A stretch of DNA of 63,947 bases, counting the filler, from Octopus bimaculoides (taxonomy: Eukaryota): NCBI RefSeq assembly GCF_001194135.2. It is 10 parts of 10 records of this genome, joined end to end, with 100 filler letters (N's around TTAATTAATTAA, not from the genome) between each part and the next. Parts side by side here need not be neighbours in the genome. Positions count along the whole stretch, not along the records: positions 27,943 to 48,235 come from NC_068991.1; 9 more parts are not named here. One strand, written 5' to 3'. Every line of letters begins with the position of its first letter. Position 1 is the first letter of the stretch. Both the position numbers and the translations under genes were made by a program. The notes beneath the pieces are model-generated. The model was not told the origin of the DNA, ran no database searches, and worked only from the letters and a program-made list of their open reading frames with translations. Positions 27,024 through 48,235 of the stretch are shown here, one piece after another.

Positions 27024-29555
27024 TGTCTGCCTGTCTGTCTGTCTGATTGTCTATCTGTTTATATTTCTCTCTCTCTCTCTATCTATCTATATATATNNNN
27101 NNNNNNNNNNNNNNNNNNNNNNNNNNNNNNNNNNNNNNNNNNNNNNNNNNNNNNNNNNNNNNNNNNNNNNNNNNNNNNNNNNNNNNNNNNNNNNNNNNNN
27201 NNNNNNNNNNNNATATATATTTATATATATATATTTATCTGTTCGTATACGCATAAATGCCATAAAGTGTACTCACTACTTAGAGTGTTACCATTTACTG
27301 GAAGTTGAACGAAACCTTACTGATGATGTATGGGATTATGAAGAGAATTCTTAAGCAATAGAGGGATGAACATTCAAACTAGAGACTCGATTATACCATA
27401 AAATATTTTTTGATTTATTTTCAAATGTGGGAATATTGATAATGGCCGCATAATATATTGTATCTGTAAAATGGTTATTACAAGGTGACCTGTTATAAAA
27501 ATAATGATCACAAATGTTGGGAACTAATATTGGCATCTAAAAATAAAGAAGATATACTTCCAACAATATTAGGGAACAAAATTGACTAAAATAGTTCAGA
27601 GAATTGATTATGAGACGCACTGCAATATGCTGATTGTACTTGTGGACGTTTACATGCTAAGATATACTGGAGGTATACTCAACCATATTTGTGTATGTGT
27701 TTTGTATGTGTGTGTATGTGTATGTGGGTGTGCGTGCATGTGTATGTTTGCGTGTGGTTGTGCTGTTGTGTGTTCGCATGTATTCAGTATTTGTAAACAT
27801 ATATATATATACACACATATGTATATGTATGTATATACCTATNNNNNNNNNNNNNNNNNNNNNNNNNNNNNNNNNNNNNNNNNNNNTTAATTAATTAANN
27901 NNNNNNNNNNNNNNNNNNNNNNNNNNNNNNNNNNNNNNNNNNTAGAACACATTACCGAAAACGAAAATCGCCTAACTTAAAAAATAAAAAAGTTACACCC
28001 ATTTTCCCTCAGTGTCTAATTCCAATGTCCACCAAATTCTTTCCCATAAATCCTTATATACTTTGAATCCACGGCATCTAAGTGGTATTTGTTGAAATTT
28101 TCGTTAAAAAGGATCCATTTTTCTGGAAGTTATGAGGCAACAAAGTCGTGGGAAGAGGTACACATATGTGGTTATGCCGACTCTAATATATTATGTCTTA
28201 TTTTATCTAACTCGAAAGGATGAAATGCAAAGTTGATTCCGGCGATATTTAAACTCAGCGCGTAAAGAGACAGAGGAAATATTATCCAACAGAAGGACGG
28301 GGTAGCGAAAGACAGCACGAATATCTGCTTACAGGTCAACGGGATCAGCAATGACCTGGAGTTTAAATAATAAAATCGACCACGATATACTTAAAAAGAA
28401 AGTTAAACGGTTAAAAAAACAGACTATTTATACGTACAGTAGAGTGGGTGTGGTCGACTGTTCGTCAGGTACTTGCTGGCATCGCACGGTAATAAAACGC
28501 ACCGTAAAACACCTCTGCTTATAACCTAGTTTTCTTCCTTCGTAAATATTAAAATAGTTTGAAACGTTACACTAGATATAAAACAGTTTGATTGTAGAGG
28601 AACTGCTGATAAATATACAACTATGAAGGGAGGTAATGGGACAAACAGGAGTAAAAGTTGGAAATGTATTTGCTTGAGTGCGTTCTAATTAGATCCCACT
28701 GTATGAAATGTTCTGGTTAAACGAAATGTTTATGTTTACCAATGTAGGCATGTGTGTATATTTGTCTCTTATCTATAAGACATGCTGTCTCACTACTTTA
28801 CTACGCACCTACATATGTATGTTATGCATCTGTTTAAATGTGTTGTGTGTGTGTGCATGTATGTTTAATTATTGAGTTGGTAAGAAAGTAATTTCGTTTT
28901 TCGCATATAGATAGTTAGGATTTTTTTATGCTTTTTGCCAACGTTATAATTTTTCCCTTTTGACATTTTATTGCCGTTACTGTTAGTTTACTTAAGAAGC
29001 TAATTGCGCGTAATTTTGTTTACAGCTATTAGTTCAGTATCAATTTTAACATGGAGTGCAAAAAGCTGCAGAGGCTCACAAAGAAATACGTGAAGTTTAT
29101 GGTGTTGATTGCTGAACAAAACGCACATGTCAAAAATAGTTTCAAAAATTCTGTTCTGGAGATTTTTGACTCAAAAATGACCAACTTTCTGGCCGATCTT
29201 CTGAAGTTGATGATGACCGAATCAAAGCCATAATTGAATCTTGTCATATAACTGTGCGAGAAACTTCAGAGAGGTTAAATGTATCACAACAAACAAAAAT
29301 CACTTAAAATGTATTGGACTTCTTAAGACGCGCGATATTTGGGTTCCACATAGATTGAAAGAGATTCATTTAACACAACAAAACAATATTTATGATATGC
29401 ATCTCAAACGCAATGAAATCGACCTTTTTCTATTGAAACAAATCATCACTGGTGATGAAAAATGATTTGTCTACAATATCATCAATCGAAAAGGTAATGA
29501 ACCAGCACAAACCACATCGAAAGCTGAATTGCATCTGAAAAAAGAAAAAAAAAGG

Positions 29556-30401
29556 TGTAACAAGAGTTTAAGAGTTGGGCTTTACCAGTTTAGGAAGTAT
29601 ATTTAGATGTGTGCACGTAAGAAGGTTTGGAATGTATAAATGCATGTTTTACATAAAGGTACTAATAAATATCAGAAGGCAATGTTTTTGGTTAACAAAC
29701 ATAATTTAGGTACTACTAAAGCAGCGCGGACCCGAACGCGCAGTCGCGCGTCCTCGCTAGCTAGTCTTGAGTGGTCGATCCTAACCCTATCCCTAACCCT
29801 AACCCTAACCCTATCCCTAAACCGCGTGTGCAAATGAATACGTGTTTAGGGTTAGGGTTAGGGTTAGGATCGACCACTCACGACTAGCTAGCGCGGACGC
29901 GCGACTGCGCGTTCGGGTCCGCGCTGCTTTAGTAGTACCCATAATTTATTCCTTACTCACACATGAAGTAGCTAGCACAACAGAGATAAGTGTACAAGAC
30001 AACAGGGTGTAGGTGACATGAGTTAATTCCTCAATGCACATCAAGGTAGTTAACTCCGGTACTTGGCTGCAAATCTAAAATATCCAATAAGTTTTGAAGT
30101 GGCAGTGAGGTGAGGCAGAAATCCCGTAGCATGTCGAGCTAGATGAGCCACAAGCTTTTTGATAGTTTAGTGTCTACATCTGAATGGGATAAAGCAAAGC
30201 AGTGATGAAAGGGAACCAAGTGTTAACATTCTGACATTTAGATAGCAACTGAATAAATGCTCTTGAAAAGCTAGCATTGTTACTCTGGGCAGAAGTTGTC
30301 ATGTGTATTCTTCTGCCACTAGCTTTTAAAGAATGAAGGAATGCAGCACCAGTGTGCTGCTATGCTGGGGCGAGGTAATTCGACTGCCCTGCTATGCTAC
30401 A
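29556..30401. mobile_element. solo LTR inserted in the mariner transposase
   Basis: Termini TGTAACA...TGCTACA with 4-bp TSD AAGG (29552-29555, 30402-30405). Removing it restores AAG GTC ATG CTG (KVML). Confidence 0.8.
29709..29939. mobile_element. 231-bp foldback MITE with GG...CC ends, 9-bp TSD and telomeric-repeat core (Merlin- or Mutator-like)
   Basis: TIR about 90 bp (ggtactactaaagcagcgcggacccgaacgcgcagtcgcgcgtcc...) with about 3 mismatches. TSD CATAATTTA (29700-29708, 29940-29948). (CCCTAA)-type tract 29780-29820 and (TTAGGG) tract 29846-29868. Confidence 0.9.
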
Positions 30402-31470
30402 AAGGTCATGCTGTAAGTTTGGTGGGATTACAAAAGTATTGTGTATTTTGAGTTGCTTCCAAGGAACCAAACGATCAATTCAGATGTTTATTGTCAACAA
30501 CGAATGAAACTGGAGGAAGCAATTACAGAAAAACGGCAAGAATTGGCAAATCTTAAAGGATTGGTGTTCCACTATGACAACGCTGGATTACACATATCTT
30601 TGCTAACTCATGAAAAATTATTGGAACTTGGTTGGGAAGTGATATCACATCCACCATATAGTCCTAACCTTGCACCAACAGATTACCATTTATTTCGTAG
30701 TTTGCAAAATTCTTTGAATGGTAAAACTTTCAATAATGATGATGACCTGAAATTAGACTTGCTTCAGTTTTTGACTGATAAGGACCAGAAGTTCTATGAG
30801 CGTGGAATCATGAAGTTGCCAGAAAGACAACAAAAGGTCATCGAACAAAATGGAAAATATATAATTGATTAAAGCTTATTCTTTGTATGAAAAAAAAAAT
30901 GACTTCCTTGCCAACCCAATATAACCAAGGAGCAAATCCATAGATGAACTTAATACAGTAAACTCTAGGTTCACACCCAAAAGAAATTATGTATATGTAT
31001 ATATATGTATATATATATAAGAGGCAACACATAATTTTATACATGTATGAATGCACCAACAAAGAAAAACAAAGAGAAAAATAATACACTACCAGATTTA
31101 AAAAAAGTAGTGTACATGTTTGATTCAAATAAATCAAAAGAAATTGGTCAGTCAATAAAATCACTTTTCTATCCCACAGACTGCTTCTATGAAGTCACTG
31201 CAATGATTAGCTCCTAGGATTAGGTGGCTTCATCTATGCTGCCCACCATCCCTGCATTGCCAGCATCCAATGAGTTCTTACCACTGTGGTGCCACCAGCT
31301 ATACCCTCCCTCGATGAAACCTGGGAACATAGCAATTGCATTATTGGCAGCATTATTAATGTTGCCAATATAAAATCACAATTTTATGCTAAATTTCAGT
31401 CGAATAAAATGTTAAAAATTGCTTTAAAAATGGTAGATAAGAAAGAACAGAATGTTACAGTTCAAATATG

Positions 31471-32639: not shown

Positions 32640-33033
32640 CTCTTTTAAATGTCTCAGTCATTTGACTGTGGCCATGCTGGAGCACTGTCTTTACTTGAAG
32701 AAATCGACCCCAGAACTTATTCTTTGTAAGCCTAGTACTTATTCTATCGGTCTCTTTTGCCAAACCAATAAGTTACAGGGACGTAAACACACCAACATCA
32801 GTTGTCAAATGATGGTGGAGGTGGGGACAAACACAGACACAAATACATGCACACACACACACACACACATATACATACGCAACAGGCTTCTTGCAGTTTT
32901 TGTCATCCAAATCCACTCAAGGCTTTGGTCAGCCTGAGGCTATAATAGAAGACGCTTGTCCAAGGTACCATGCAATGGGACTGAACCCAGAACCATGTGG
33001 TTGGGAAGCAAACTTCTTACCACACGGCCACTC

Positions 33034-33431: not shown

Positions 33432-33918
33432 AATTAAGCAGAAAATGGAGAAATCTTTCTCAACAACAATTAATTAACATTGATTATTATTTTTTAATAC
33501 AACATCTAAAAGCCGTTTCTGCTTCCAATGTCATACTTTGTTGCCATTGAAAATTCTGAGAATAATATTAGTCATATTTTGTAACACATCCGATCTGAAA
33601 ATGGAGCTTCATCAGAGTGAAGAAAAATACATAAAGAAAAGAAAAGAAAAAGAGCCTTGAGAGGAAGAATGAAGGCTCAATATATTTAAATCATACTATT
33701 TTGTAGTGTAATGCTTCAGGACATTGAGTAAATGACTAAACTAGAACTTAAACTGACCGATTATATCGAAAGCTGGACTTTGGTCAATCCCATTATGGGC
33801 AATAGGTGGTTGGTCTTGACAACATATCAGCAAGTAAATAATTGTTATCAATTGATGGGCATTTTATTAGGATTAACTATTAATTAGTACTATTAACATA
33901 ACCTTCAGAACTATTATG

Positions 33919-34480
33919 GGATCTTTTTTAAAACGGGGGCCACATTTTTCATTAATGTTTTACGTAGTGTTTTTGGTACGGAAAGACTTTCAAACTTCGT
34001 ATACTTATCTATTTTGTGTTATAGAACCGAAAAATATTTTTGTATTCGAATTTATTTCATGTAAAAAATTGTCTTATTTCGATAATTTCAACCAATCACT
34101 GACGTCCATTCAGTCGATATACATTAAGTGCCGACTACATAAACAAACAATTCTTCGTTTTATTTGCTTTTTTCATTTTAAATTTGCTTTAACCCTAACC
34201 CTAACCTTAACCCTAACCCTAGGGTTAGGGTTAGAGTTAGGGTTAGGGTTAGGATTAATTGTTTCAGAATCGTTTGTTTATGTATATCGGCTGAATGGAC
34301 GTCAGTGATTGGTTGAAATTACAGAAATACGACAACTTTAACATGGAATAATTTATGGATTTCTTTTTTTTTAAAGAAGACTAAGAGAAAAAGATGTTTT
34401 ATATGACACATTCTACCAGTGTTCCAAGTTTCAAAGTGTTTTGTTAATGAAAAATGTGGCCCCCGTTTTAAAAAAGATCC
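33919..34480. mobile_element. 562-bp MITE with GG...CC ends, 37-bp perfect TIR, 8-bp TSD and central telomeric palindrome (Merlin- or hAT-like)
   Basis: TIR ggatcttttttaaaacgggggccacatttttcattaa. TSD CTATTATG (33911-33918, 34481-34488). Inner inverted repeat 34084-34124 / 34280-34320. (CCCTAA)5|(TTAGGG)5-type core at 34190-34253. Confidence 0.9.
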
Positions 34481-35149: not shown

Positions 35150-36480
35150 TAATTTCTTCATTTCCACAATTTCAGCTTCAGCTGCAGTCTCTGGGTCTTG
35201 ACTTTTGTATACATCGAAGGTCCCAATCTTGTTAGATACAGGTTTTGAAATATCGAAAGTTTTGCAGCATTTGAGCTCTCATTTTAGGTCATATTTTACA
35301 GAAAGCATTGCCTGGAAGAATTTTAGTTGAACAAATCGACCCTAGTACTTACTTCTCTTTTAAGCCTGATACTTATTCTATTGGTCTCTTTTGCTGAACC
35401 ACTAAGTTATGAGGATATAAACGCACCAATACTGATTGTCAAGCAGTGGTAGGAGGGACAAAGACACACGCACACACACAACCCCTCCCCCACACACAAC
35501 CCCTCNNNNNNNNNNNNNNNNNNNNNNNNNNNNNNNNNNNNNNNNNNNNNNNNNNNNNNNNNNNNNNNNNNNNNNNNNNNNNNNNNNNNNNNNNNNNNNN
35601 NNNNNNNNNNNNNNNNNNNNNNNNNNNNNNNNNNNNNNNNNNNNNNNNNNNNNNNNNNNNNNNNNNNNNNNNNNNNNNNNNNNNNNNNNNNNNNNNNNNN
35701 NNNNNNNNNNNNNNNNNNNNNNNNNNNNNNNNNNNNNNNNNNNNGAGCGCTTTATACAGGTAGAGTAAAAATTGTTGTACTCTTTTATGAATATTATTTC
35801 CTTTGGTAGCTGTTACAGTCTTCTTAATTATCATCTCTGTTATCTTTCTCTTGAGCCTGTAGCTTAAATTTGGTTTAGAATTAAAAAAATTCTTCAATAT
35901 ACGCATTAGGACCAATTGTACATGTTAGCATTACTATCAAATTAGCAATAGATTTGATTAAATTTAGTTTAACTTTGATTCAAACAGCTTGTTTGCTTCT
36001 TGAAAATGTTTTAGAACTGGATGCAAAAATAAAGTGGAATTTCATTCCTAGAATCACAAAACATTTCGTATATTGTTTGAGCTGTAAAGCACTTTTCTTT
36101 TGGACTTGTAGTTTGGAAACGAGTTTATAATTCAAATTAAAATGGCTTAAAATTCTACTTACAGCTGGTTCTTTTGAAAGCTACCTAGATGCATAAGAGT
36201 TTATAATCTTCAAGGGCTCCTTATCATTGATTGCAAAGTAAAACTGCTTGTAGGTTCTTTGACCAGTTGCAGAGTGAGAGATGCTAAAAATTCTAAGTTT
36301 CTAGGCAGGCATTCAGCACAAGTGAGGGATACTGCCAACTGTAAAGAATGACATACACATTTAAATAAAAGTAATGATGAAACTTCCTCTCTTAATTTCT
36401 GGAAAACACCATTGTTGATTCCTACTGTTACACTGGTATTGTTGGTTCCTATGGCCAGCAAATTTTATGTAGAGGACTCA
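35150..36480 (-). pseudogene. decayed hAT-superfamily (ZNF862/Charlie-like) transposase, split by a SINE and a gap
   Basis: ORF 36210-36461 has IGTNNTSVTVGINNGVFQKLREEVSSLLLFKCVCHSLQLAVS (D..ASVMVG / CxxH motif). C-terminal AMLSVKYDLK*ELKCCKTFDISKPVSNKIGTF lies at about 35200-35310. Confidence 0.75.
35322..35470 (-). mobile_element. SINE family A, 3' half, inserted in the hAT relic
   Basis: gaacaaatcgaccctagtact...ctattggtctcttttgctgaaccactaagtt...gacaaagacac. Confidence 0.75.
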
Positions 36481-38691: not shown

Positions 38692-38757
38692 ATCAGTTGC
38701 ACCAATGAAAACCAAGGATGTTGTTGAACAATTCCAAAACTCAAGCAAAAAAAAACA

Positions 38758-38791
<34 letters not shown>

Positions 38792-38902
38792 CAGTTGCAC
38801 CAATGAAAACCAAGGATGTTGTTGAACAATTCCAAAACACAAGCAAAAAAAAAACAAAAAAAACAAAACAAAACAAAATAAAACAAAACAAAACAAAAAT
38901 TC
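38692..38902. repeat. about 100-bp tandem duplication ending in (AAAAC)n
   Basis: cagttgcaccaatgaaaaccaaggatgttgttgaacaattccaaaac...aaaacaaaaatt occurs twice head-to-tail. Confidence 0.92.
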
Positions 38903-40209: not shown

Positions 40210-40715
40210 NNNNNNNNNNNNNNNNNNNNNNNNNNNNNNNNNNNNNNNNNNNNNNNNNNNNNNNNNNNNNNNNNNNNNNNNNNNNNNNNNNNNNNNNNNN
40301 NNNNNNNNNNNNNNNNNNNNNNNNNNNNNNNNNNNNNNNNNNNNNNNNNNNNNNNNNNNNNNNNNNNNNNNNNNNNNNNNNNNNNNNNNNNNNNNNNNNN
40401 NNNNNNNNNNNNNNNNNNNNNNNNNNNNNNNNNNNNNNNNNNNNNNNNNNNNNNNNNNNNNNNNNNNNNNNNNNNNNNNNNNNNNNNNNNNNNNNNNNNN
40501 NNNNNNNNNNNNNNNNNNNNNNNNNNNNNNNNNNNNNNNNNNNNNNNNNNNNNNNNNNNNNNNNNNNNNNNNNNNNNNNNNNNNNNNNNNNNNNNNNNNN
40601 NNNNNNNNNNNNNNNNNNNNNNNNNNNNNNNNNNNNNNNNNNNNNNNNNNNNNNNNNNNNNNNNNNNNNNNNNNNNNNNNNNNNNNNNNNNNNNNNNNNN
40701 NNNNNNNNNNNNNNN

Positions 40716-41563: not shown

Positions 41564-42394
41564 ATAGGTGATAGTCGTTGCTTAACCCCAGGTCAGCCAT
41601 GACCGAACAGAATATCTTCAGAAGTTACAACTTCAGCGCTTACTTATGCATCAACATCCACAGCCTCCCGAAACTCAAAAGTGGAAGTTAGCAGCAGTTG
41701 AACCTCTAACCAGTGGAACCCATTCATTCCTCAAGCATCGGAAGAGAAGGCCCTCCATTATGGGTAAATAGTCTCTTATTTAAGATGTGACCGTTAGGCA
41801 GTATACCAACGAAACAATGGNNNNNNNNNNNNNNNNNNNNNNNNNNNNNNNNNNNNNNNNNNNNNNNNNNNNNNNNNNNNNNNNNNNNNNNNNNNNNNNN
41901 NNNNNNNNNNNNNNNNNNNNNNNNNNNNNNNNNNNNNNNNNNNNNNNNNNNNNNNNNNNNNNNNNNNNNNNNNNNNNNNNNNNNNNNNNNNNNNNNNNNN
42001 NNNNNNNNNNNNNNNNNNNNNNNNNNNNNNNNNNNNNNNNNNNNNNNNNNNNNNNNNNNNNNNNNNNNNNNNNNNNNNNNNNNNNNNNNNNNNNNNNNNN
42101 NNNNNNNNNNNNNNNNNNNNNNNNNNNNNNNNNNNNNNNNNNNNNNNNNNNNNNNNNNNNNNNNNNNNNNNNNNNNNNNNNNNNNNNNNNNNNNNNNNNN
42201 NNNNNNNNNNNNNNNNNNNNNNNNNNNNNNNNNNNNNNNNNNNNNNNNNNNNNNNNNNNNNNNNNNNNNNNNNNNNNNNNNNNNNNNNNNNNNNNNNNNN
42301 NNNNNNNNNNNNNNNNNNNNNNNNNNNNNNNNNNNNNNNNNNNNNNNNNNNNNNNNNNNNNNNNNNNNNNNNNNNNNNNNNNNNNNNNNNNNNN

Positions 42395-42617
42395 ATCAGC
42401 CAAAGGAGTAAATCTAAACAACTGAATACTTGTCAGTGATTGGTTGAAATTATCGAAATAAGACAATTTTTTACATGAAATAAATTCGAATACAAAAATA
42501 TTTTTCTGTTCTATAACACAAAATAGATAAGTATACGAAGTTTGAAAGTCTTTCGGTACCAAAAACACTACGTAAAACATTAATGAAAAATGTGGCCCCC
42601 CGTTTTAAAAAAGATCC
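42395..42617 (-). mobile_element. second copy of the 33919-34480 MITE family, opposite orientation, remainder in gap
   Basis: Reverse complement of 33919-34105, ending in ...ggcccccgttttaaaaaagatcc. Confidence 0.88.
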
Positions 42618-42829
42618 GGCAATTGTTCATTTTGTCAATAACCACTTCTAAGTTTCTGAGAATCTGGAGATCTTGACGATATCAGATCTCAACTATTTTA
42701 AACAGTTTGGTACAAAATACTGGACGAGATGGGCTTGCTGAAGCGCAAGCCTACGGTTATTTGAATTCAGCGTTCCAGCGTTCGATGTTATGATCATCAC
42801 CCACGCGCGCGTGCGTATGTATGTATGTA

Positions 42830-42860
<31 letters not shown>

Positions 42861-43025
42861 ATGTGTGTATGTGTATGTGTATAAGTGTGCGTGTATGTAT
42901 GATTGGTGACGTTTGTGTGTACAATGGAAGAACCATGACCAGCACACCTATTTCTATTTTTCCAGACACAATGTGCCTAAAACTATATTATACAAATATA
43001 CCCTCCTTTTGTAAGTCTATAAGAT

Positions 43026-45002
43026 TGTAGCGACCAAATATATAAAAAACACAAAGATGGAATGAGGTAAGTGCCAACAAGAAAAGAGAGAGACTCAACC
43101 AGTAAAGATGTATAAAAGTAAGGTTTATTGGTTGTCAACTAGAATGTCTGTGTGAGTGTGACTGCGACATAATAAAACAATATAAGACGAGCCGTCATGT
43201 AAACAAAGAGTGTGTATACAAATATGTGTATGTGAATGCAAGAGATACAGAGCATAGAAAACAGTCTATAATAAGGACTTTAAAAGTCCAGACACAAGGA
43301 TGTGAAATACCAGTTCGTAACTGAGGTACACAGTAGGTTGAAACGCTGTACCAAGAGGCTGTGGCGTTGTAGGCAGAGCCGAGTAAGACACATGTCGTGT
43401 AGGAAGTTGAAGATATTTCACAAACAGTATTGAGTGAACCTGTGCGGGCGCTGTTGGTGGTGTGTACGTAGAGACGTCGGTGTAGACGCTAAGAAGCTGG
43501 AAGTAGCGACGAAGATGGAGTTTGCAGCAAGGTGTTGAAAGAAGTGGTGTGTCGTCGATGGAACTGGCTGGTGCTATGTGGTCAGTGGCTAGACCTCAGA
43601 AGGTCTAAGGCCAAAGACAACTTTAGTGCAGACAAGCAAGCTATTTAAGAGAAAAAATCGGCTCAAGCAGGGGTTCAGAAAACCGTTCCACGTGACCTTA
43701 TCAGAAGGCTGCGATTGGTTGGTATGCACCTTGGCGCGAAATAAAACTAGAGACAAAAGTGCGCCAATACCAACCAATCTCAGTGGTGGACACAACAGGG
43801 TCCAAAGATGCGGTCGAAAGCTAGATGTTATCTGCTACGTCTGCATTCACATATATATAACTGAGAGAGAAGCTTCGCTACAGAGCCCCCCACCAGTCAT
43901 TTTGCGCAAGACAAAACAGACGATACAGGAAATAACTGTAGCGAAAAAGCTGAAAGAAACGTTGGTCATAAAGCTGGCACTTGGTCACCATTTAGTAAAA
44001 CGCTCGTGTGTACGTCGGGCTGCGCGTTGGGATCACGTCAGGGTCACCAGTTTGTAGCGGACCGTGCGACCAGGAGATGGTGACGAAGGAACGGCTCCTT
44101 TAGCACATCACACGATCGGCACAAATATATAAAAAACGCAAAGATGGAATGAGGTAAGTGCCAACAACAAAAGAGAGAGACTCAACCGGTAAAGATGTAT
44201 AAAAGTAAGGTTTATTGGTTGTCAATTAGAATGTCTGTGTGAGTGTGAACGCGACATGATAAAACACAATATAAGACAGGCCGTCATGTAAACAAAGAGT
44301 GTGTATACAAATATATGTATGTGAATGCAAGAGATACAGAGTATAGAAAACAGTCTATAATAAGGACGTTAAAAGTCTAGACACAAGGATGTGAAATACC
44401 AGTTCGTATTCATGGTACACAGTGGTAAAGGTGCTGTACAAGAAGTCGTGGACGAATAGCAGAGCCTGGAGAAAAGATACATGTCACCCGAGAAGTTGAG
44501 GCTACGATGCTGCGACCGGTTACTTGGTACAGAGGGTCTCGCTGGTGAAGCAATTCACACAAACAGTGTTGAGAGAAAGTTATGTTAGCGTTGCTGGTTT
44601 GGTGTGTACGTTGAGACGTCGGTGTAGACGCTGGCGATGAAGAAGCTTGTAGTAAACAGTTAGTTGAACGGTGGTGTGTCGTCGCTGGAACTGGCTGGTG
44701 GTCAGTGGCTAGACCTTAGAAGGTCTAAAGTCAAAGACAACTTTAGTGCAGACAAGCAAGCTATTTAAGAGAAAAAATCGGCTCAAGCAGGGGTTCAGAA
44801 AACCGTTCCACGTGACCTTATCAGAAGGCTGCGATTGGTTGGTATGCACCCTGGCGCGAAATAGAACTAGAGACAAAAGTGCGCCAATACCAACCAATCA
44901 GAGTGGTGGACACAACAGAGTCCAAAGATGCAGCCGAAGGCTAGCTGTTATCTGCTACGTCCGCATTCACATATATATAACTGAGAGAGAAGCTTCACTA
45001 CA
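43026..45002 (-). mobile_element. non-autonomous LTR retrotransposon: two long LTRs and a 170-bp internal region (Gypsy, CsRn1-like PBS)
   Basis: LTRs 43026-43882 and 44053-45002, TGTAGCG...CTACA ends, 4-bp TSD AGAT (43022-43025, 45003-45006). PBS at 44032-44049 (plus strand atcacgtcagggtcacca, the 3' end of tRNA-Trp). PPT actggtgggggctc (minus strand) adjoins the 3' LTR at 43883-43896. Confidence 0.92.
44032..44049 (-). promoter_or_regulatory. primer-binding site complementary to tRNA-Trp
   Basis: TGGTGACCCTGACGTGAT lies 3 nt from the 5' LTR. It matches the eukaryotic tRNA-Trp 3' end (AUCACGUCGGGGUCACCA, recalled) at 17 of 18 positions, the exception being a G:U wobble. Confidence 0.85.
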
Positions 45003-46042
45003 AGATATAACTTGAGGGAAATTTAGTTGTTATTTCTCGCATGTCAAACGTCTTCGTAGAGGTTTCCTCTCGAAATCCTCTTCTGACCAAAGACTTTTAC
45101 TAGTCTTCTTTAGCCTTCTGTCTTCCATTATGACTCCATTCACATCCAGGGTGCTTTACAAGAATATTTAATCGACCTGAGTATATGACTGGTACTTTCT
45201 TTTATCGACCCTAGTAGGATGAAAAGAGCCGTTGACCTTGAGATTTGGACAAAGAACATAAAGAGCCATATATAAACACCACTAGGTATTTTGCTCGACA
45301 TTCTAACATTTCTATAAAACCAATAGAATCGTCTTAACGAAATGTTATGTTTTCAATGTGGAATCTTTAGAGAACAGTTTTTTGGAATTTGCTTCTCTGA
45401 GAAATTAATTTCCACTGGGTTACGAATTGTAAAGGATTAAGGTCTTTGTTGTGTAACCCTGGGTCGACTTAAGCTCAGCGCCAAATCATCCCCAGGTCAT
45501 CCTCAGCTCATCTATAGTTAGAGATGACATGATTAAAAAAGACGTTGTGTAATTTGAATAAGATTTTGATGCTATTTTTCGTATGTCGAACGACCTCGTA
45601 GAGGTTCCTGTGCACCATATGTATTATAAACAGAAAGGAGAGCTAACCAGACTTCAGTTGTAAACCAGAACTCTCTTCACCAACTCGAATCCTCATGAAA
45701 TGCAGTCATTACATAGCAGATAGATTACTCACCACACTCTTTTATAATGCAATGTTGCATATTTAGCTTGTTTGCTGTTAATATTTTTTTTTTTTAGATA
45801 ATTCGCACTACTTTCTTATAATCCACTGCGTAGTTTCTAATTTAGTAATTCAGATCCAATTTTCTGCTTTTGTTTTTGGCATTTTTCCATTAATGCAAGA
45901 CCATAAAAATTTCATGCGAACTCAGTTGTAAAAAATTACAAACCATGTTCAGATATAAAGAGAAAAGGGTCTAATTGGTGCCTAGTCATTGTTCAGTCAG
46001 TACATTTTCAGTATTTTTAACATATTTCACAAGAGTAATGTA

Positions 46043-46200
46043 CCTCACTTGTTTAATGTACACCACTTGCTGAGTGTAATTACTCGTTTAACGAGCCTCA
46101 CTTGTTTAACAAACACCATTTGTTTAATGTAATCACTCGTTTAACGAGCCTCACTTGTTTAACGAACAACAATTGTTTAATGTAATCACTCGTTTAACGA
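46043..46200. repeat. about 52-bp minisatellite, 3 units, with near-palindromic ctcgtttaacgag
   Basis: cctcacttgtttaa...cacc...tgtttaatgtaatcactcgtttaacgag repeated. Confidence 0.85.
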
Positions 46201-46317
46201 AATTTTGTATTTTATTTATCAAAAGTTGTAGGTAATCGAGGAAAATAAAATATAAACAAGGTCACCTATTTTGTTTTATTCACGTATCAATAACGAAAAA
46301 CAATCGCACCTTTAAAA

Positions 46318-46523
46318 TACGTCACTTGTTTCAGTCATGAGACTGCGGCTGTGCTGGGGAATTGTCTTGAAGGGTTTAGTCGAAAAAGTCAACGCCAGTA
46401 CTTTTTTTATAAAGCCTGGTGTGTATTCTATTGGTCTATTTTGCCGAACCGTTAACCTACGGGACGTATACAAACCAGCGCCGGTTGTCAGGCAATGAGA
46501 GAGGACAAATCGAAAGGTGCGCG

Positions 46524-46590
<67 letters not shown>

Positions 46591-46925
46591 GACGGGCTTC
46601 TTTCAGTTACCATCTTGCAAATTCACTCGCAAGCCTTTGGTCGGTCCGAGCTGGATTGAACGCGGAACCATGTGATTGTACGCATACGCTCTACAGATTT
46701 TCTTTATCTTACATCTTTTGCTTGTTTCAGTCATTAGACTGCAGTCATGCTGGAGCACCACCTTGAAGAATTTCTAGTCGAATGAATCGACCCTAGTACT
46801 TATTTATAAAAAAGCTTACTACTTATTGTATCGGACTCTTTTGCCGAACCGCTAAGTTACGGTGACGTAAGCACACCAACACCGGTTGTCAAGCGGCGGT
46901 AGGGGACAAACACAGACATAAACAC
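46318..46925 (-). mobile_element. two tandem SINE family A copies (46318-46680 and 46715-46925)
   Basis: Each begins on the plus strand with ttgtttcagtca...gactgc...gctgg, followed by the conserved body. Confidence 0.85.
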
Positions 46926-47601
46926 AGATATATGGTATATATTCAACGTGACGAGTTGAATTTTTCATTTGGTGAGACTTACTGAAGAGAGCTAAGGTTT
47001 TTCGCCAAAACTCGAATCAAGATACAAGTATATCCAAATACCAAATTGTATAGCATTTAGCAGTGATGGTATGTCACGTTTTTGCTCGCTTGCCCGACTA
47101 CTGTTATCTGTTGAAATTTTCAGTGTCATTGGTTGTTAAGTTGAGGGGTTTAGCTTCACTTTCTAGCAGGTAGGCGATTCATGTGCCCAGCTATCTCACG
47201 CTATTTAACGCCTACAGCCACCTATATCATTGTTGTTGTTATTATCATTTTATATTTATCACAGATAATAATAACAATACTAATATCTATAGAAATATTC
47301 GCTTTTGAATATTTACTCATTATATACATACATACATAAACACAGACACAGACACACGCGCGCACGCACACACACACACACACACACACACATTTGAAAT
47401 AATGAGTAGTACACACATTTTTTTCAGTTTGAAAACGGCTACGAGACGCTTGAAACTCATATAAGAGTAACTCCCTGTAAACATTATTATAAAGATTAAA
47501 TTAAATATTATCCCCCAAAAGCCGTCTCTACTCATTCTTTCAAATATATTTATAATACTGTACGAAGAACTTTCCCTTTATCATTCTACTATATATATGT
47601 A

Positions 47602-47740
<139 letters not shown>

Positions 47741-48199
47741 AATGACAACAAAAGAATGAGACCGCGAAATTAGGTAATCAGCAGAATATATATATATATA
47801 TATAACTTAGGACAATCAGTAACTTGTCATAATAGGACTCAGAGTTTCAAATGCTGGAGCTAAGAGCTACGATGCGTTCTCATCGGCTATTATGAAAATA
47901 GATGCTATAAAAAAAAACCCCGTTGAATAAAAGGGAAGTTACTCCTATAGGTAGGAAAAATATAGAAGATAAAAAATACACGCAGCTATATTCTCACAAT
48001 ACATAGACATAAAAACCTCATGAGCTCATAACGTCTACATACGTACACACTCACAAACATGTATATGTACATCCCCATACAGACACAAGCATACATGTGC
48101 ATTTACGTACTCATACACATATCCACACAAACATAAACACGCACGCACATACATATAATTATATATATATGTATGTATGTATGTATGTGTGTATGTATG

Positions 48200-48235
<36 letters not shown>

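What the first reader, a model, noticed from the sequence alone, without database searches (positions are those of the whole stretch)
43026..45002. Miniature LTR retrotransposon with giant LTRs: 170-bp core holding only a tRNA-Trp PBS and a PPT
Seen: two LTRs (857 and 950 bp) with TG...CA ends and an AGAT TSD, a PBS 3 nt from the 5' LTR, a PPT touching the 3' LTR, and no gag/pol. The core also has a second TGGTGACC and an internal TGTAGCGA that mimics the LTR terminus. Known: tRNA-Trp priming with 4-bp TSDs is associated with CsRn1-clade Gypsy elements, and TRIMs normally have short (a few hundred bp) LTRs. Inference: either a mobilisable non-autonomous family with a TRIM-sized core and full-size LTRs, or a one-off internal deletion.
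Basis: partly seen in the sequence, partly recalled or inferred. Interest (0 to 1): 0.7.

Follow-up and report, generated by a model that had tools for sequence, protein, structure and literature searches.

The report
Gutted tRNA-Trp-primed LTR retrotransposon copy
This is an old, non-coding copy of an LTR retrotransposon: two ~900-bp repeats around a 170-bp remnant that keeps the tRNA-Trp primer site. It is an ordinary kind of genomic fossil, and I could not test whether it spread in this short form.

Summary
Two direct repeats, 43026-43882 (857 bp) and 44053-45002 (950 bp), have sharp TGTAGCG...CGCTACA ends. AGAT flanks both sides, and a 170-bp core lies between them.

The element lies on the minus strand. 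An 18-nt site 3 nt after the right-hand repeat matches the complement of the tRNA-Trp 3' end at 17/18, and the mismatch is a G.U wobble. A G-run (GGTGGGGGG) sits 3 nt before the left-hand repeat, not touching it. There is no gag or pol in any frame.

New here: the two LTRs are a mosaic. The outer ~300 bp on each side are 95% identical. The middle is about 86% identical with 21 indel events. The 3' LTR also lacks 59 bp near its U5 end. So the copy is old and was reshaped after insertion, or the short-read scaffold is chimeric there.

tRNA-Trp priming and a 4-bp duplication fit CsRn1-type Gypsy elements, which papers report as common in cephalopods. With no gag or pol, clade membership cannot be tested.

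"Mobilised family or one-off" stays open. Long LTRs with a tiny interior are already described in plants. Interest is low to moderate.

The parts
43022..43025 (.). Left copy of the 4-bp target-site duplication, AGAT
   Evidence: Identical to 45003-45006. Chance of a 4-bp match at fixed boundaries is 1/256.
43026..43882 (-). 3' LTR in element orientation, 857 bp. Plus strand reads TGTAGCGACC...CTTCGCTACA.
   Evidence: Direct repeat of 44053-45002 (blastn E=0; alignments). It lacks 59 bp present near the U5-side end of the other LTR but keeps the terminal GGTCGCTACA.
43124..43129 (-). AATAAA on the minus strand in the 3' LTR. The same motif is at 44211-44216 in the 5' LTR. Inferred polyadenylation signal.
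   Evidence: Read from the sequence and conserved in both LTRs. A GT-rich stretch (TTTTGTTGTTGG) follows ~45 nt downstream, which is the layout reported for animal Metaviridae LTRs (PMC3601003). Function is inferred, not tested.
43713..43779 (.). Interrupted palindrome in the LTR, GATTGGTTGGTAT...ATACCAACCAATC, carrying four CCAAT/ATTGG motifs. The second copy is at 44833-44899. A CACGTG motif lies at 43689-43694.
   Evidence: Folds at -29 to -33.5 kcal/mol with z -4.3 to -5.6, and no shuffle of 200 folds as well. It lies in the best-conserved LTR segment, 98-100% identical. A promoter or enhancer role is inferred only.
43883..44052 (-). Internal region (core), 170 bp, non-coding
   Evidence: No Pfam match in six frames. 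Contains the PBS, the G-run and two recurrences of terminal motifs.
43886..43894 (-). Polypurine-tract-like G-run, GGTGGGGGG, 3 nt (CTC) upstream of the 3' LTR
   Evidence: Read from the sequence. It is weak: 9 nt, interrupted by a T, and not adjacent to the LTR.
43937..43951 (+). Inverted copy of the LTR 5' terminus inside the core: TGTAGCGAAAAAGCT versus the LTR start TGTAGCGAAGCT
   Evidence: Exact 9-mer TGTAGCGAA, or 12/12 if a 3-nt insertion is allowed. The 8-mer occurs in 0.4% of shuffles. It pairs with the start of the 3' LTR in the predicted fold, but the whole region's z-score is only -1.4. Origin unexplained.
43983..43990 (-). Second TGGTGACC, with a similar upstream context (ACTAAA versus ACAAAC)
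   Evidence: 0.38% of shuffles. Meaning unknown.
44032..44049 (-). Primer-binding site TGGTGACCCTGACGTGAT, complementary to the 3' end of tRNA-Trp
   Evidence: 17/18 to the complement of ATCACGTCGGGGTCACCA (mouse tRNA-Trp-CCA 3' fragment, PMC7555719; antisense human tRNA-Trp). The mismatch puts U opposite a tRNA G. It is the only match of 14/18 or better in the piece.
44050..44052 (-). 3-nt spacer (AAC on the minus strand) between the 5' LTR and the PBS
44053..45002 (-). 5' LTR in element orientation, 950 bp. Plus strand reads TGTAGCGGACC...CTTCACTACA.
44064..44122 (-). 59-bp U5-side segment present only in the 5' LTR
   Evidence: Gap in the alignment. The terminal ~10 bp are kept in both LTRs.
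45003..45006 (.). Right copy of the target-site duplication, AGAT

Best explanation
A non-autonomous LTR retrotransposon copy lying on the minus strand.

Inferred mechanism: a short RNA (R-U5-PBS-~150 nt-G-run-U3-R) was transcribed from an LTR promoter. It was packaged and reverse-transcribed from a tRNA-Trp primer by proteins supplied in trans by an autonomous Ty3/Gypsy element of the tRNA-Trp-primed (CsRn1-like) kind. Integrase then inserted it with a 4-bp staggered cut (AGAT).

On this reading the copy was already short when it integrated. It was either a member of a non-autonomous family or a single defective cDNA made by template switching.

The copy then aged. Substitutions and many indels accumulated. 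The 3' LTR lost 59 bp of U5-side sequence, a part not needed for a further round of copying. The outer parts of the two LTRs, only 170 bp apart, were probably kept similar by LTR-LTR gene conversion while the indel-ridden middle drifted.

Shown: the anatomy, the strand, the PBS match, the absence of coding capacity and the mosaic divergence.
Inferred: trans-mobilisation, short form at integration, gene conversion, and the U3/R/U5 layout.
For: The LTR pair has sharp TG...CA ends, an 8-bp terminal inverted repeat and a 4-bp TSD.

The PBS matches tRNA-Trp at 17/18, lies 3 nt from the LTR and is unique in the piece.

The minus strand carries AATAAA plus a GT-rich stretch in the last quarter of both LTRs, as in animal Metaviridae LTRs (PMC3601003).

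There is no protein domain in six frames.

For 'short at integration': at least ~4 kb of interior is gone, yet both priming sites survive within 170 bp. The indel runs seen in the LTRs are at most 59 bp each. Erosion by such small deletions cannot explain the loss, and a single random large deletion would rarely end this close to both LTRs.

Non-coding LTR elements with long LTRs and very short interiors exist as families elsewhere (PMC13570524). Non-autonomous LTR families are known in animals (PMC3532108, PMC3286476).

The CsRn1 lineage uses a tRNA-Trp PBS and typically a 4-bp TSD (PMC3630058, PMC2582038) and is well represented in cephalopods (PMC6238403).
Against: No second copy of the LTR or the core could be found. 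There is none in the 20-kb piece and none in any searchable collection, but none of those collections appears to hold the host genome. A family is therefore undemonstrated.

The two LTRs are far from identical. The middle has K2P 0.15 with 21 indel events, against 0.048 and 1 event in the outer parts. Nothing about the state at integration can be read from them.

The G-run is a weak PPT.

A single-locus sequence cannot distinguish 'short at integration' from 'deleted later'.
Confidence: 0.5

Rival explanations
1. A full-length autonomous element inserted here, and one or a few large illegitimate-recombination deletions later removed gag-pol in place. This leaves a unique dead relic that never moved in this form.
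For: The copy is clearly old and deletion-prone: 21 indel events in the LTR middle and a 59-bp loss in the 3' LTR. Internal deletion of old LTR elements is a well-documented decay route (Devos 2002 and Ma 2004, as cited in PMC13570524; PMC3615480). No other copy of the core was found.
Against: Both deletion end points would have to fall within about 150 nt of the LTRs and spare the PBS and the G-run, which is unlikely for random end points. The indel runs actually seen are at most 59 bp each. The failure to find other copies says nothing, because the host genome could not be searched.
Confidence: 0.3
2. Assembly artefact. The piece is a gapped short-read scaffold, and the LTR-core-LTR arrangement, or the mosaic LTR sequence, is a collapse or chimera of reads from several copies of a repeat family.
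For: N gaps at 35506-35744, 40210-40715 and 41821-42394 mark a short-read scaffold. The pattern of conserved LTR parts nearly identical and the variable middle very different is what consensus-like assembly of a multi-copy family could produce.
Against: The stretch 42395-48235 is contiguous. The two LTRs were resolved as distinct sequences. A 170-bp interior is short enough for single reads or read pairs to span. The matching AGAT flanks and the correctly placed PBS and G-run are not expected from a random mis-join.
Confidence: 0.1
3. Not a single insertion. The two LTRs come from two different family members, joined by inter-element recombination or adjacent insertions, and the AGAT match is chance.
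For: The LTR middle differs by K2P 0.15 with a transversion-rich spectrum (12 ts: 19 tv) and 21 indel events. The outer parts differ by 0.048 (21 ts: 6 tv). This looks like two subfamily variants.
Against: A 4-bp flank match has 1/256 chance. The right-hand LTR taken alone has only a 3/4 flank match (AGTT/AGAT). The PBS and the G-run sit in the correct order and orientation between the LTRs. Ectopic or intra-element gene conversion explains the mosaic without a second insertion.
Confidence: 0.07

Closest known systems
CsRn1 clade of Ty3/Gypsy LTR retrotransposons (CsRn1, PwRn1, Kabuki, AgCR, CsRn1_Cv1)
   Same: A PBS complementary to the 3' end of tRNA-Trp. The published consensus is TGGTGA(G/C)CCCG(T/A); here it is TGGTGACCCTGA. 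A 4-bp target-site duplication and TG...CA LTR ends. The clade is reported in 9 of 12 cephalopod species surveyed (PMC2582038, PMC3630058, PMC6238403).
   Different: This copy has no gag, pol or integrase, so the clade-defining CHCC Gag motif, GPY/F integrase motif and RT phylogeny are absent. The LTRs here (857-950 bp) are longer than the 179-381 bp quoted for CsRn1_Cv1 and PwRn1. tRNA-Trp priming is not exclusive to this clade.
[quoted passage not shown] PbTRIM of ants
   Same: A non-coding interior of a few hundred bp or less, holding little more than a PBS and a PPT. 4-bp TSD. Presumed mobilisation in trans (PMC3532108).
   Different: TRIMs are under 1 kb (or under 1.5 kb in the extended definition) with LTRs of ~100-350 bp. 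This element is 1977 bp with 857-950-bp LTRs. Copy number and mobility, which are central to TRIM descriptions, are not shown here.
Non-autonomous LTR retrotransposons of intermediate size, the 1.5-4 kb continuum described in sugar beet
   Same: Non-coding, with LTRs making up nearly the whole element. Total length over LTR length is about 2.2 here. That study reports many families with very short interiors, especially those with long LTRs (PMC13570524).
   Different: Those are plant families supported by multiple copies and high LTR identity. This is a single animal locus with strongly diverged LTRs.
LARDs (large retrotransposon derivatives)
   Same: Full-size LTRs around a non-coding interior.
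   Different: LARDs have ~4.4-kb LTRs and a ~3.5-kb interior, with a total above 4 kb (PMC3532108, PMC13570524).

Membership tests
LTR retrotransposon (structural definition) | Two long direct repeats with TG...CA ends and short terminal inverted repeats | tested here: met
   43026-43882 and 44053-45002, with TGTAGCGA...TCGCTACA ends
LTR retrotransposon (structural definition) | Target-site duplication flanking the whole element | tested here: met
   AGAT at 43022-43025 and 45003-45006
LTR retrotransposon (structural definition) | PBS complementary to a tRNA 3' end just inside the 5' LTR | tested here: met
   17/18 to tRNA-Trp, 3 nt from the LTR. The host's own tRNA-Trp was not available, and no tRNA gene lies in the piece.
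LTR retrotransposon (structural definition) | Polypurine tract immediately upstream of the 3' LTR | tested here: inconclusive
   Only GGTGGGGGG, 3 nt away from the LTR
LTR retrotransposon (structural definition) | gag and pol coding capacity (autonomous element) | tested here: not met
   No Pfam match in six frames of 42900-45130, so the copy is non-autonomous
CsRn1 clade (Ty3/Gypsy) | tRNA-Trp PBS | tested here: met
   Definition from PMC3630058 and PMC2582038.
CsRn1 clade (Ty3/Gypsy) | [quoted passage not shown] | tested here: met
   AGAT; PMC3630058
CsRn1 clade (Ty3/Gypsy) | CHCC zinc-finger motif in Gag | not testable with these tools
   There is no gag in this copy, and an autonomous partner could not be retrieved
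CsRn1 clade (Ty3/Gypsy) | GPY/F motif in integrase, and RT/RNase H grouping with CsRn1 and Kabuki | not testable with these tools
   There is no pol in this copy, and the host genome is not searchable here
TRIM | Total length under 1 kb (or under 1.5 kb, extended), with LTRs of ~100-350 bp | tested here: not met
   1977 bp total, with LTRs of 857 and 950 bp. Definitions from PMC3532108 and PMC13570524.
TRIM | Non-coding interior containing a PBS and a PPT | tested here: met
   (the PPT is weak)
TRIM | Multiple dispersed copies with different TSDs (evidence of mobility) | not testable with these tools
No relatives.
LARD | Total above 4 kb, with multi-kb LTRs and a multi-kb non-coding interior | tested here: not met
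   1977 bp total with a 170-bp interior

The most novel reading that the evidence does not exclude
The locus is one member of a cephalopod family of ~2-kb non-autonomous LTR retrotransposons. These would be almost all LTR, with a minimal tRNA-Trp PBS/PPT core, and would be copied in trans by CsRn1-type Gypsy elements. Each copy would spread two LTRs that carry a conserved palindromic quadruple-CCAAT hairpin and an E-box, making the family a source of dispersed promoter or enhancer modules. It would be the first animal example of the long-LTR, tiny-interior end of the non-autonomous continuum.
Probability: 0.3. Interest if true: 0.4.

Novelty: new member of a known kind. Interest (0 to 1): 0.22.

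Why it matters
If the short form turns out to be a multi-copy family, it would extend the continuum of non-autonomous LTR elements recently documented in plants to molluscs. It would also add a tractable parasite-of-a-parasite pair, this element plus a CsRn1-like partner, in cephalopods, where LTR elements make up less than 1% of the genome (PMC6238403). If it is a single relic, it matters only for repeat annotation. It is also a caution for dating: LTR divergence here is strongly heterogeneous, so the usual LTR-identity clock would mislead.

Tried and rejected
No read support, copy number or RNA evidence could be obtained.

2. A protein search with the LTR-to-core ORF 43626-44054 found nothing. 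A search with every stop-free segment of at least 28 aa from all six frames of the element also found nothing.

3. Exact look-ups of two window ORFs found no record.

4. Exact 24-mer scans with the best-conserved LTR stretch found nothing in metagenome, prokaryote-genome or viral contigs. These collections are not expected to hold cephalopod DNA.

5. There is no other LTR copy, and no paralogous empty site spanning the junction, in the 20-kb piece.

6. An Rfam scan of 42700-45400 found nothing above chance. The only hits were microsatellite-driven miRNA look-alikes. ARAGORN found no tRNA in the piece.

7. I tested whether the core beyond the PBS is a read-through copy of the whole tRNA-Trp. 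The local alignment is no better than shuffles. The 14 nt right after the PBS match 9/14, which is suggestive only.

8. I tested whether the core is built from LTR fragments. Shared 9-mers are at chance level, and the best local alignment has p~0.03, which is not robust.

9. The leader/core RNA fold has z -1.4, so there is no support for a special structure.

10. The plus-strand orientation was rejected. There is no TGG-starting PBS after the left LTR, no purine run before the right LTR, and the plus-strand AATAAA motifs are not conserved between the LTRs.

11. The supplements of the mollusc LTR survey hold no sequences to compare.

Full report
**What is there.**
The region holds two direct repeats, 43026-43882 (857 bp) and 44053-45002 (950 bp), separated by 170 bp. 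Both repeats begin TGTAGCG and end C(G/A)CTACA. In the left copy the ends form a perfect 8-bp inverted repeat, TGTAGCGA...TCGCTACA. Similarity stops exactly at these ends, and the sequences just outside are unrelated. The tetranucleotide AGAT flanks the whole structure (43022-43025 and 45003-45006). Self-BLAST of the 20-kb piece finds the pair at E=0 and no further copy.

**Orientation and priming sites.**
- Read on the minus strand, the right-hand repeat is followed by AAC and then TGGTGACCCTGACGTGAT (44049..44032).
- The 3' end of tRNA-Trp is printed as ATCACGTCGGGGTCACCA for mouse tRNA-Trp-CCA (PMC7555719). The same 18-mer appears among Aedes small RNAs (PMC4303268). The antisense human tRNA-Trp is given in bioRxiv 10.1101/400127.
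- The site matches the complement at 17/18. The single difference puts a U opposite a tRNA G, which is a wobble pair.
- It is the only match of 14/18 or better on either strand of the piece.
- Upstream of the left-hand repeat, again on the minus strand, lies GGTGGGGGG followed by CTC. This is a short, interrupted purine run 3 nt from the LTR.
- Both repeats carry AATAAA on the minus strand about 160 nt (5' LTR) and 100 nt (3' LTR) before their ends, followed by a GT-rich stretch. This is the layout described for animal Metaviridae LTRs (PMC3601003).
- The plus-strand AATAAA motifs are not conserved between the repeats.
- The element therefore lies on the minus strand. The 950-bp copy is the 5' LTR and the 857-bp copy is the 3' LTR.

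**Coding capacity.**
- Six-frame translation of 42900-45130 has no Pfam match of note.
- The rest of the piece yields only a mariner-type transposase remnant.
- The element is non-coding, and no autonomous partner lies nearby.

**The LTRs are a mosaic.**

| Segment | Identical / aligned | K2P | ts : tv | Gap events |
|---|---|---|---|---|
| Outer ~300 bp on each side | 554 / 581 | 0.048 | 21 : 6 | 1 |
| Middle ~250-300 bp | 192 / 223 | 0.154 | 12 : 19 | 21 (117 gap columns) |

- The difference in mismatch rate between the segments has Fisher p = 2e-5.
- The 3' LTR also lacks 59 bp (44064-44122 in the 5' LTR) just inside its U5-side end, yet keeps the terminal ~10 bp.
- Reverse transcription makes the two LTRs of a new copy identical, so this heterogeneity arose after integration or is an assembly effect.
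- My preferred reading is an old insertion. Its LTRs are only 170 bp apart, and gene conversion kept homogenising their outer parts. Indels in the middle blocked conversion there.
- Ectopic conversion of the middle from another family member is equally compatible.
- A chimeric short-read assembly is also possible. The piece has three N gaps.
- LTR identity is not a usable clock here. At 1-5e-9 substitutions per site per year, the outer parts suggest 5-24 My and the middle 15-77 My. The rate is assumed, so this is inference only.

**The core.**
- Besides the PBS and the G-run, the core holds a second TGGTGACC (43983-43990) with a similar upstream context.
- On the opposite strand it holds TGTAGCGAAAAAGCT (43937-43951). 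This copies the first 12 nt of the LTR apart from a 3-nt insertion.
- Each 8-mer recurs in about 0.4% of shuffles, and both together in 1.5e-5.
- The inverted terminus can pair with the start of the 3' LTR and enclose the G-run in a loop. The fold of the whole region is not unusual, however (z -1.4).
- Similarity to tRNA-Trp beyond the PBS is not significant by local alignment, although the next 14 nt match 9/14.
- Similarity between core and LTR is at or near chance.
- These recurrences are real but unexplained. They hint at a rearranged interior rather than a simple join.

**What it most likely is and how it works.**
- The anatomy is that of an LTR retrotransposon that cannot encode its own proteins.
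- It must have been made by reverse transcription from a tRNA-Trp primer and inserted by an integrase that makes 4-bp staggered cuts.
- Whether it was already short at that moment cannot be read from one locus.
- I lean to 'short at integration' (confidence 0.5). At least ~4 kb of interior is gone, yet both priming sites survive within 170 bp.
- The indel runs seen in the LTRs are at most 59 bp each. The loss therefore needs one large event, and its two end points would rarely fall this close to both LTRs by chance.
- 'Short at integration' covers two cases: a mobilised non-autonomous family, or a single defective cDNA made by template switching.
- Deletion in place (0.3), an assembly artefact (0.1) and a two-element recombinant (0.07) remain open.

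**Comparison with known families.**
- The CsRn1 lineage of Gypsy is characterised by a tRNA-Trp PBS, a CHCC Gag motif, a GPY integrase motif and typically a 4-bp TSD (PMC3630058, PMC2582038).
- That lineage is reported in 9 of 12 cephalopods surveyed (PMC6238403).
- Two of these features are met here. The others cannot be tested because gag and pol are missing, so CsRn1 membership is a lead, not a finding.
- The element fails the TRIM size criteria (under 1-1.5 kb, LTRs 100-350 bp) and the LARD criteria (over 4 kb) (PMC3532108).
- A 2026 survey of sugar beet shows that non-autonomous LTR elements form a continuum. It includes many families with long LTRs and very short interiors, and the 1.5-4 kb range simply has no name (PMC13570524).
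- Non-autonomous LTR families without a known master copy are also described in ants and mosquitoes (PMC3532108, PMC3286476).
- The architecture is therefore not new. At most this is a new member, in a mollusc, of a known kind.

**Limits.**
- Protein searches with all six frames of the element found nothing.
- Exact-ORF look-ups found nothing.
- DNA pattern scans found nothing.
- None of these collections appears to contain the host genome, so these negatives do not bear on copy number.
- The host was not identified here.

Noticed in passing
window 43713-43779 and 44833-44899: Each LTR carries a 67-bp interrupted palindrome with four CCAAT/ATTGG motifs, next to a CACGTG E-box (43689-43694). 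It folds far better than shuffles (z -4.3 to -5.6) and sits in the most conserved LTR segment. It could be an NF-Y-type bidirectional promoter or enhancer module, or a source of hairpin RNA.
   Followed up: partly
window 29170-29462 and 30417-30869 (+): Remnants of a mariner-type transposase (Pfam Transposase_1, E=2e-13). They are split by about 1 kb that includes a 253-bp self-complementary stretch at 29701-29949 (85% identity).
   Followed up: partly
window 32641-32865, 35311-35498, 46325-46509, 46714-46926: Four copies, 68-77% alike, of a ~200-bp dispersed repeat. At least two of them abut (CA)n microsatellites. This is probably a SINE-like family.
   Followed up: no
window 33908-34114 and 42421-42628: A pair of 208-bp inverted repeats, 94.7% identical and about 8.3 kb apart. 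One lies beside the N gap 41821-42394. A 306-bp weak palindrome lies at 34049-34354.
   Followed up: no
window 46025-46213: A tandem array of about 3.5 copies of a 53-bp unit, 76-78% alike (families D7 and D10).
   Followed up: no
window 45008-45064 and 45550-45606: The right flank of the element, starting 5 nt after the LTR end, is 77% identical to a stretch 542 bp downstream. The insertion may lie at the edge of another repeat.
   Followed up: partly
window 38693-38788 and 38791-38888: A tandem duplication of ~97 bp at 95% identity.
   Followed up: no
window 44078-44084: The U5-side part of the 5' LTR has TGGTGAC on the plus strand, so its RNA could pair with the first 7 nt of the PBS 28 nt downstream. 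The minimum-energy fold did not use this pairing. This segment is the part missing from the 3' LTR.
   Followed up: partly
window 35506-35744, 40210-40715, 41821-42394: Three runs of N. The piece is a gapped scaffold, so repeat sequences in it may be consensus-like or chimeric.
   Followed up: no
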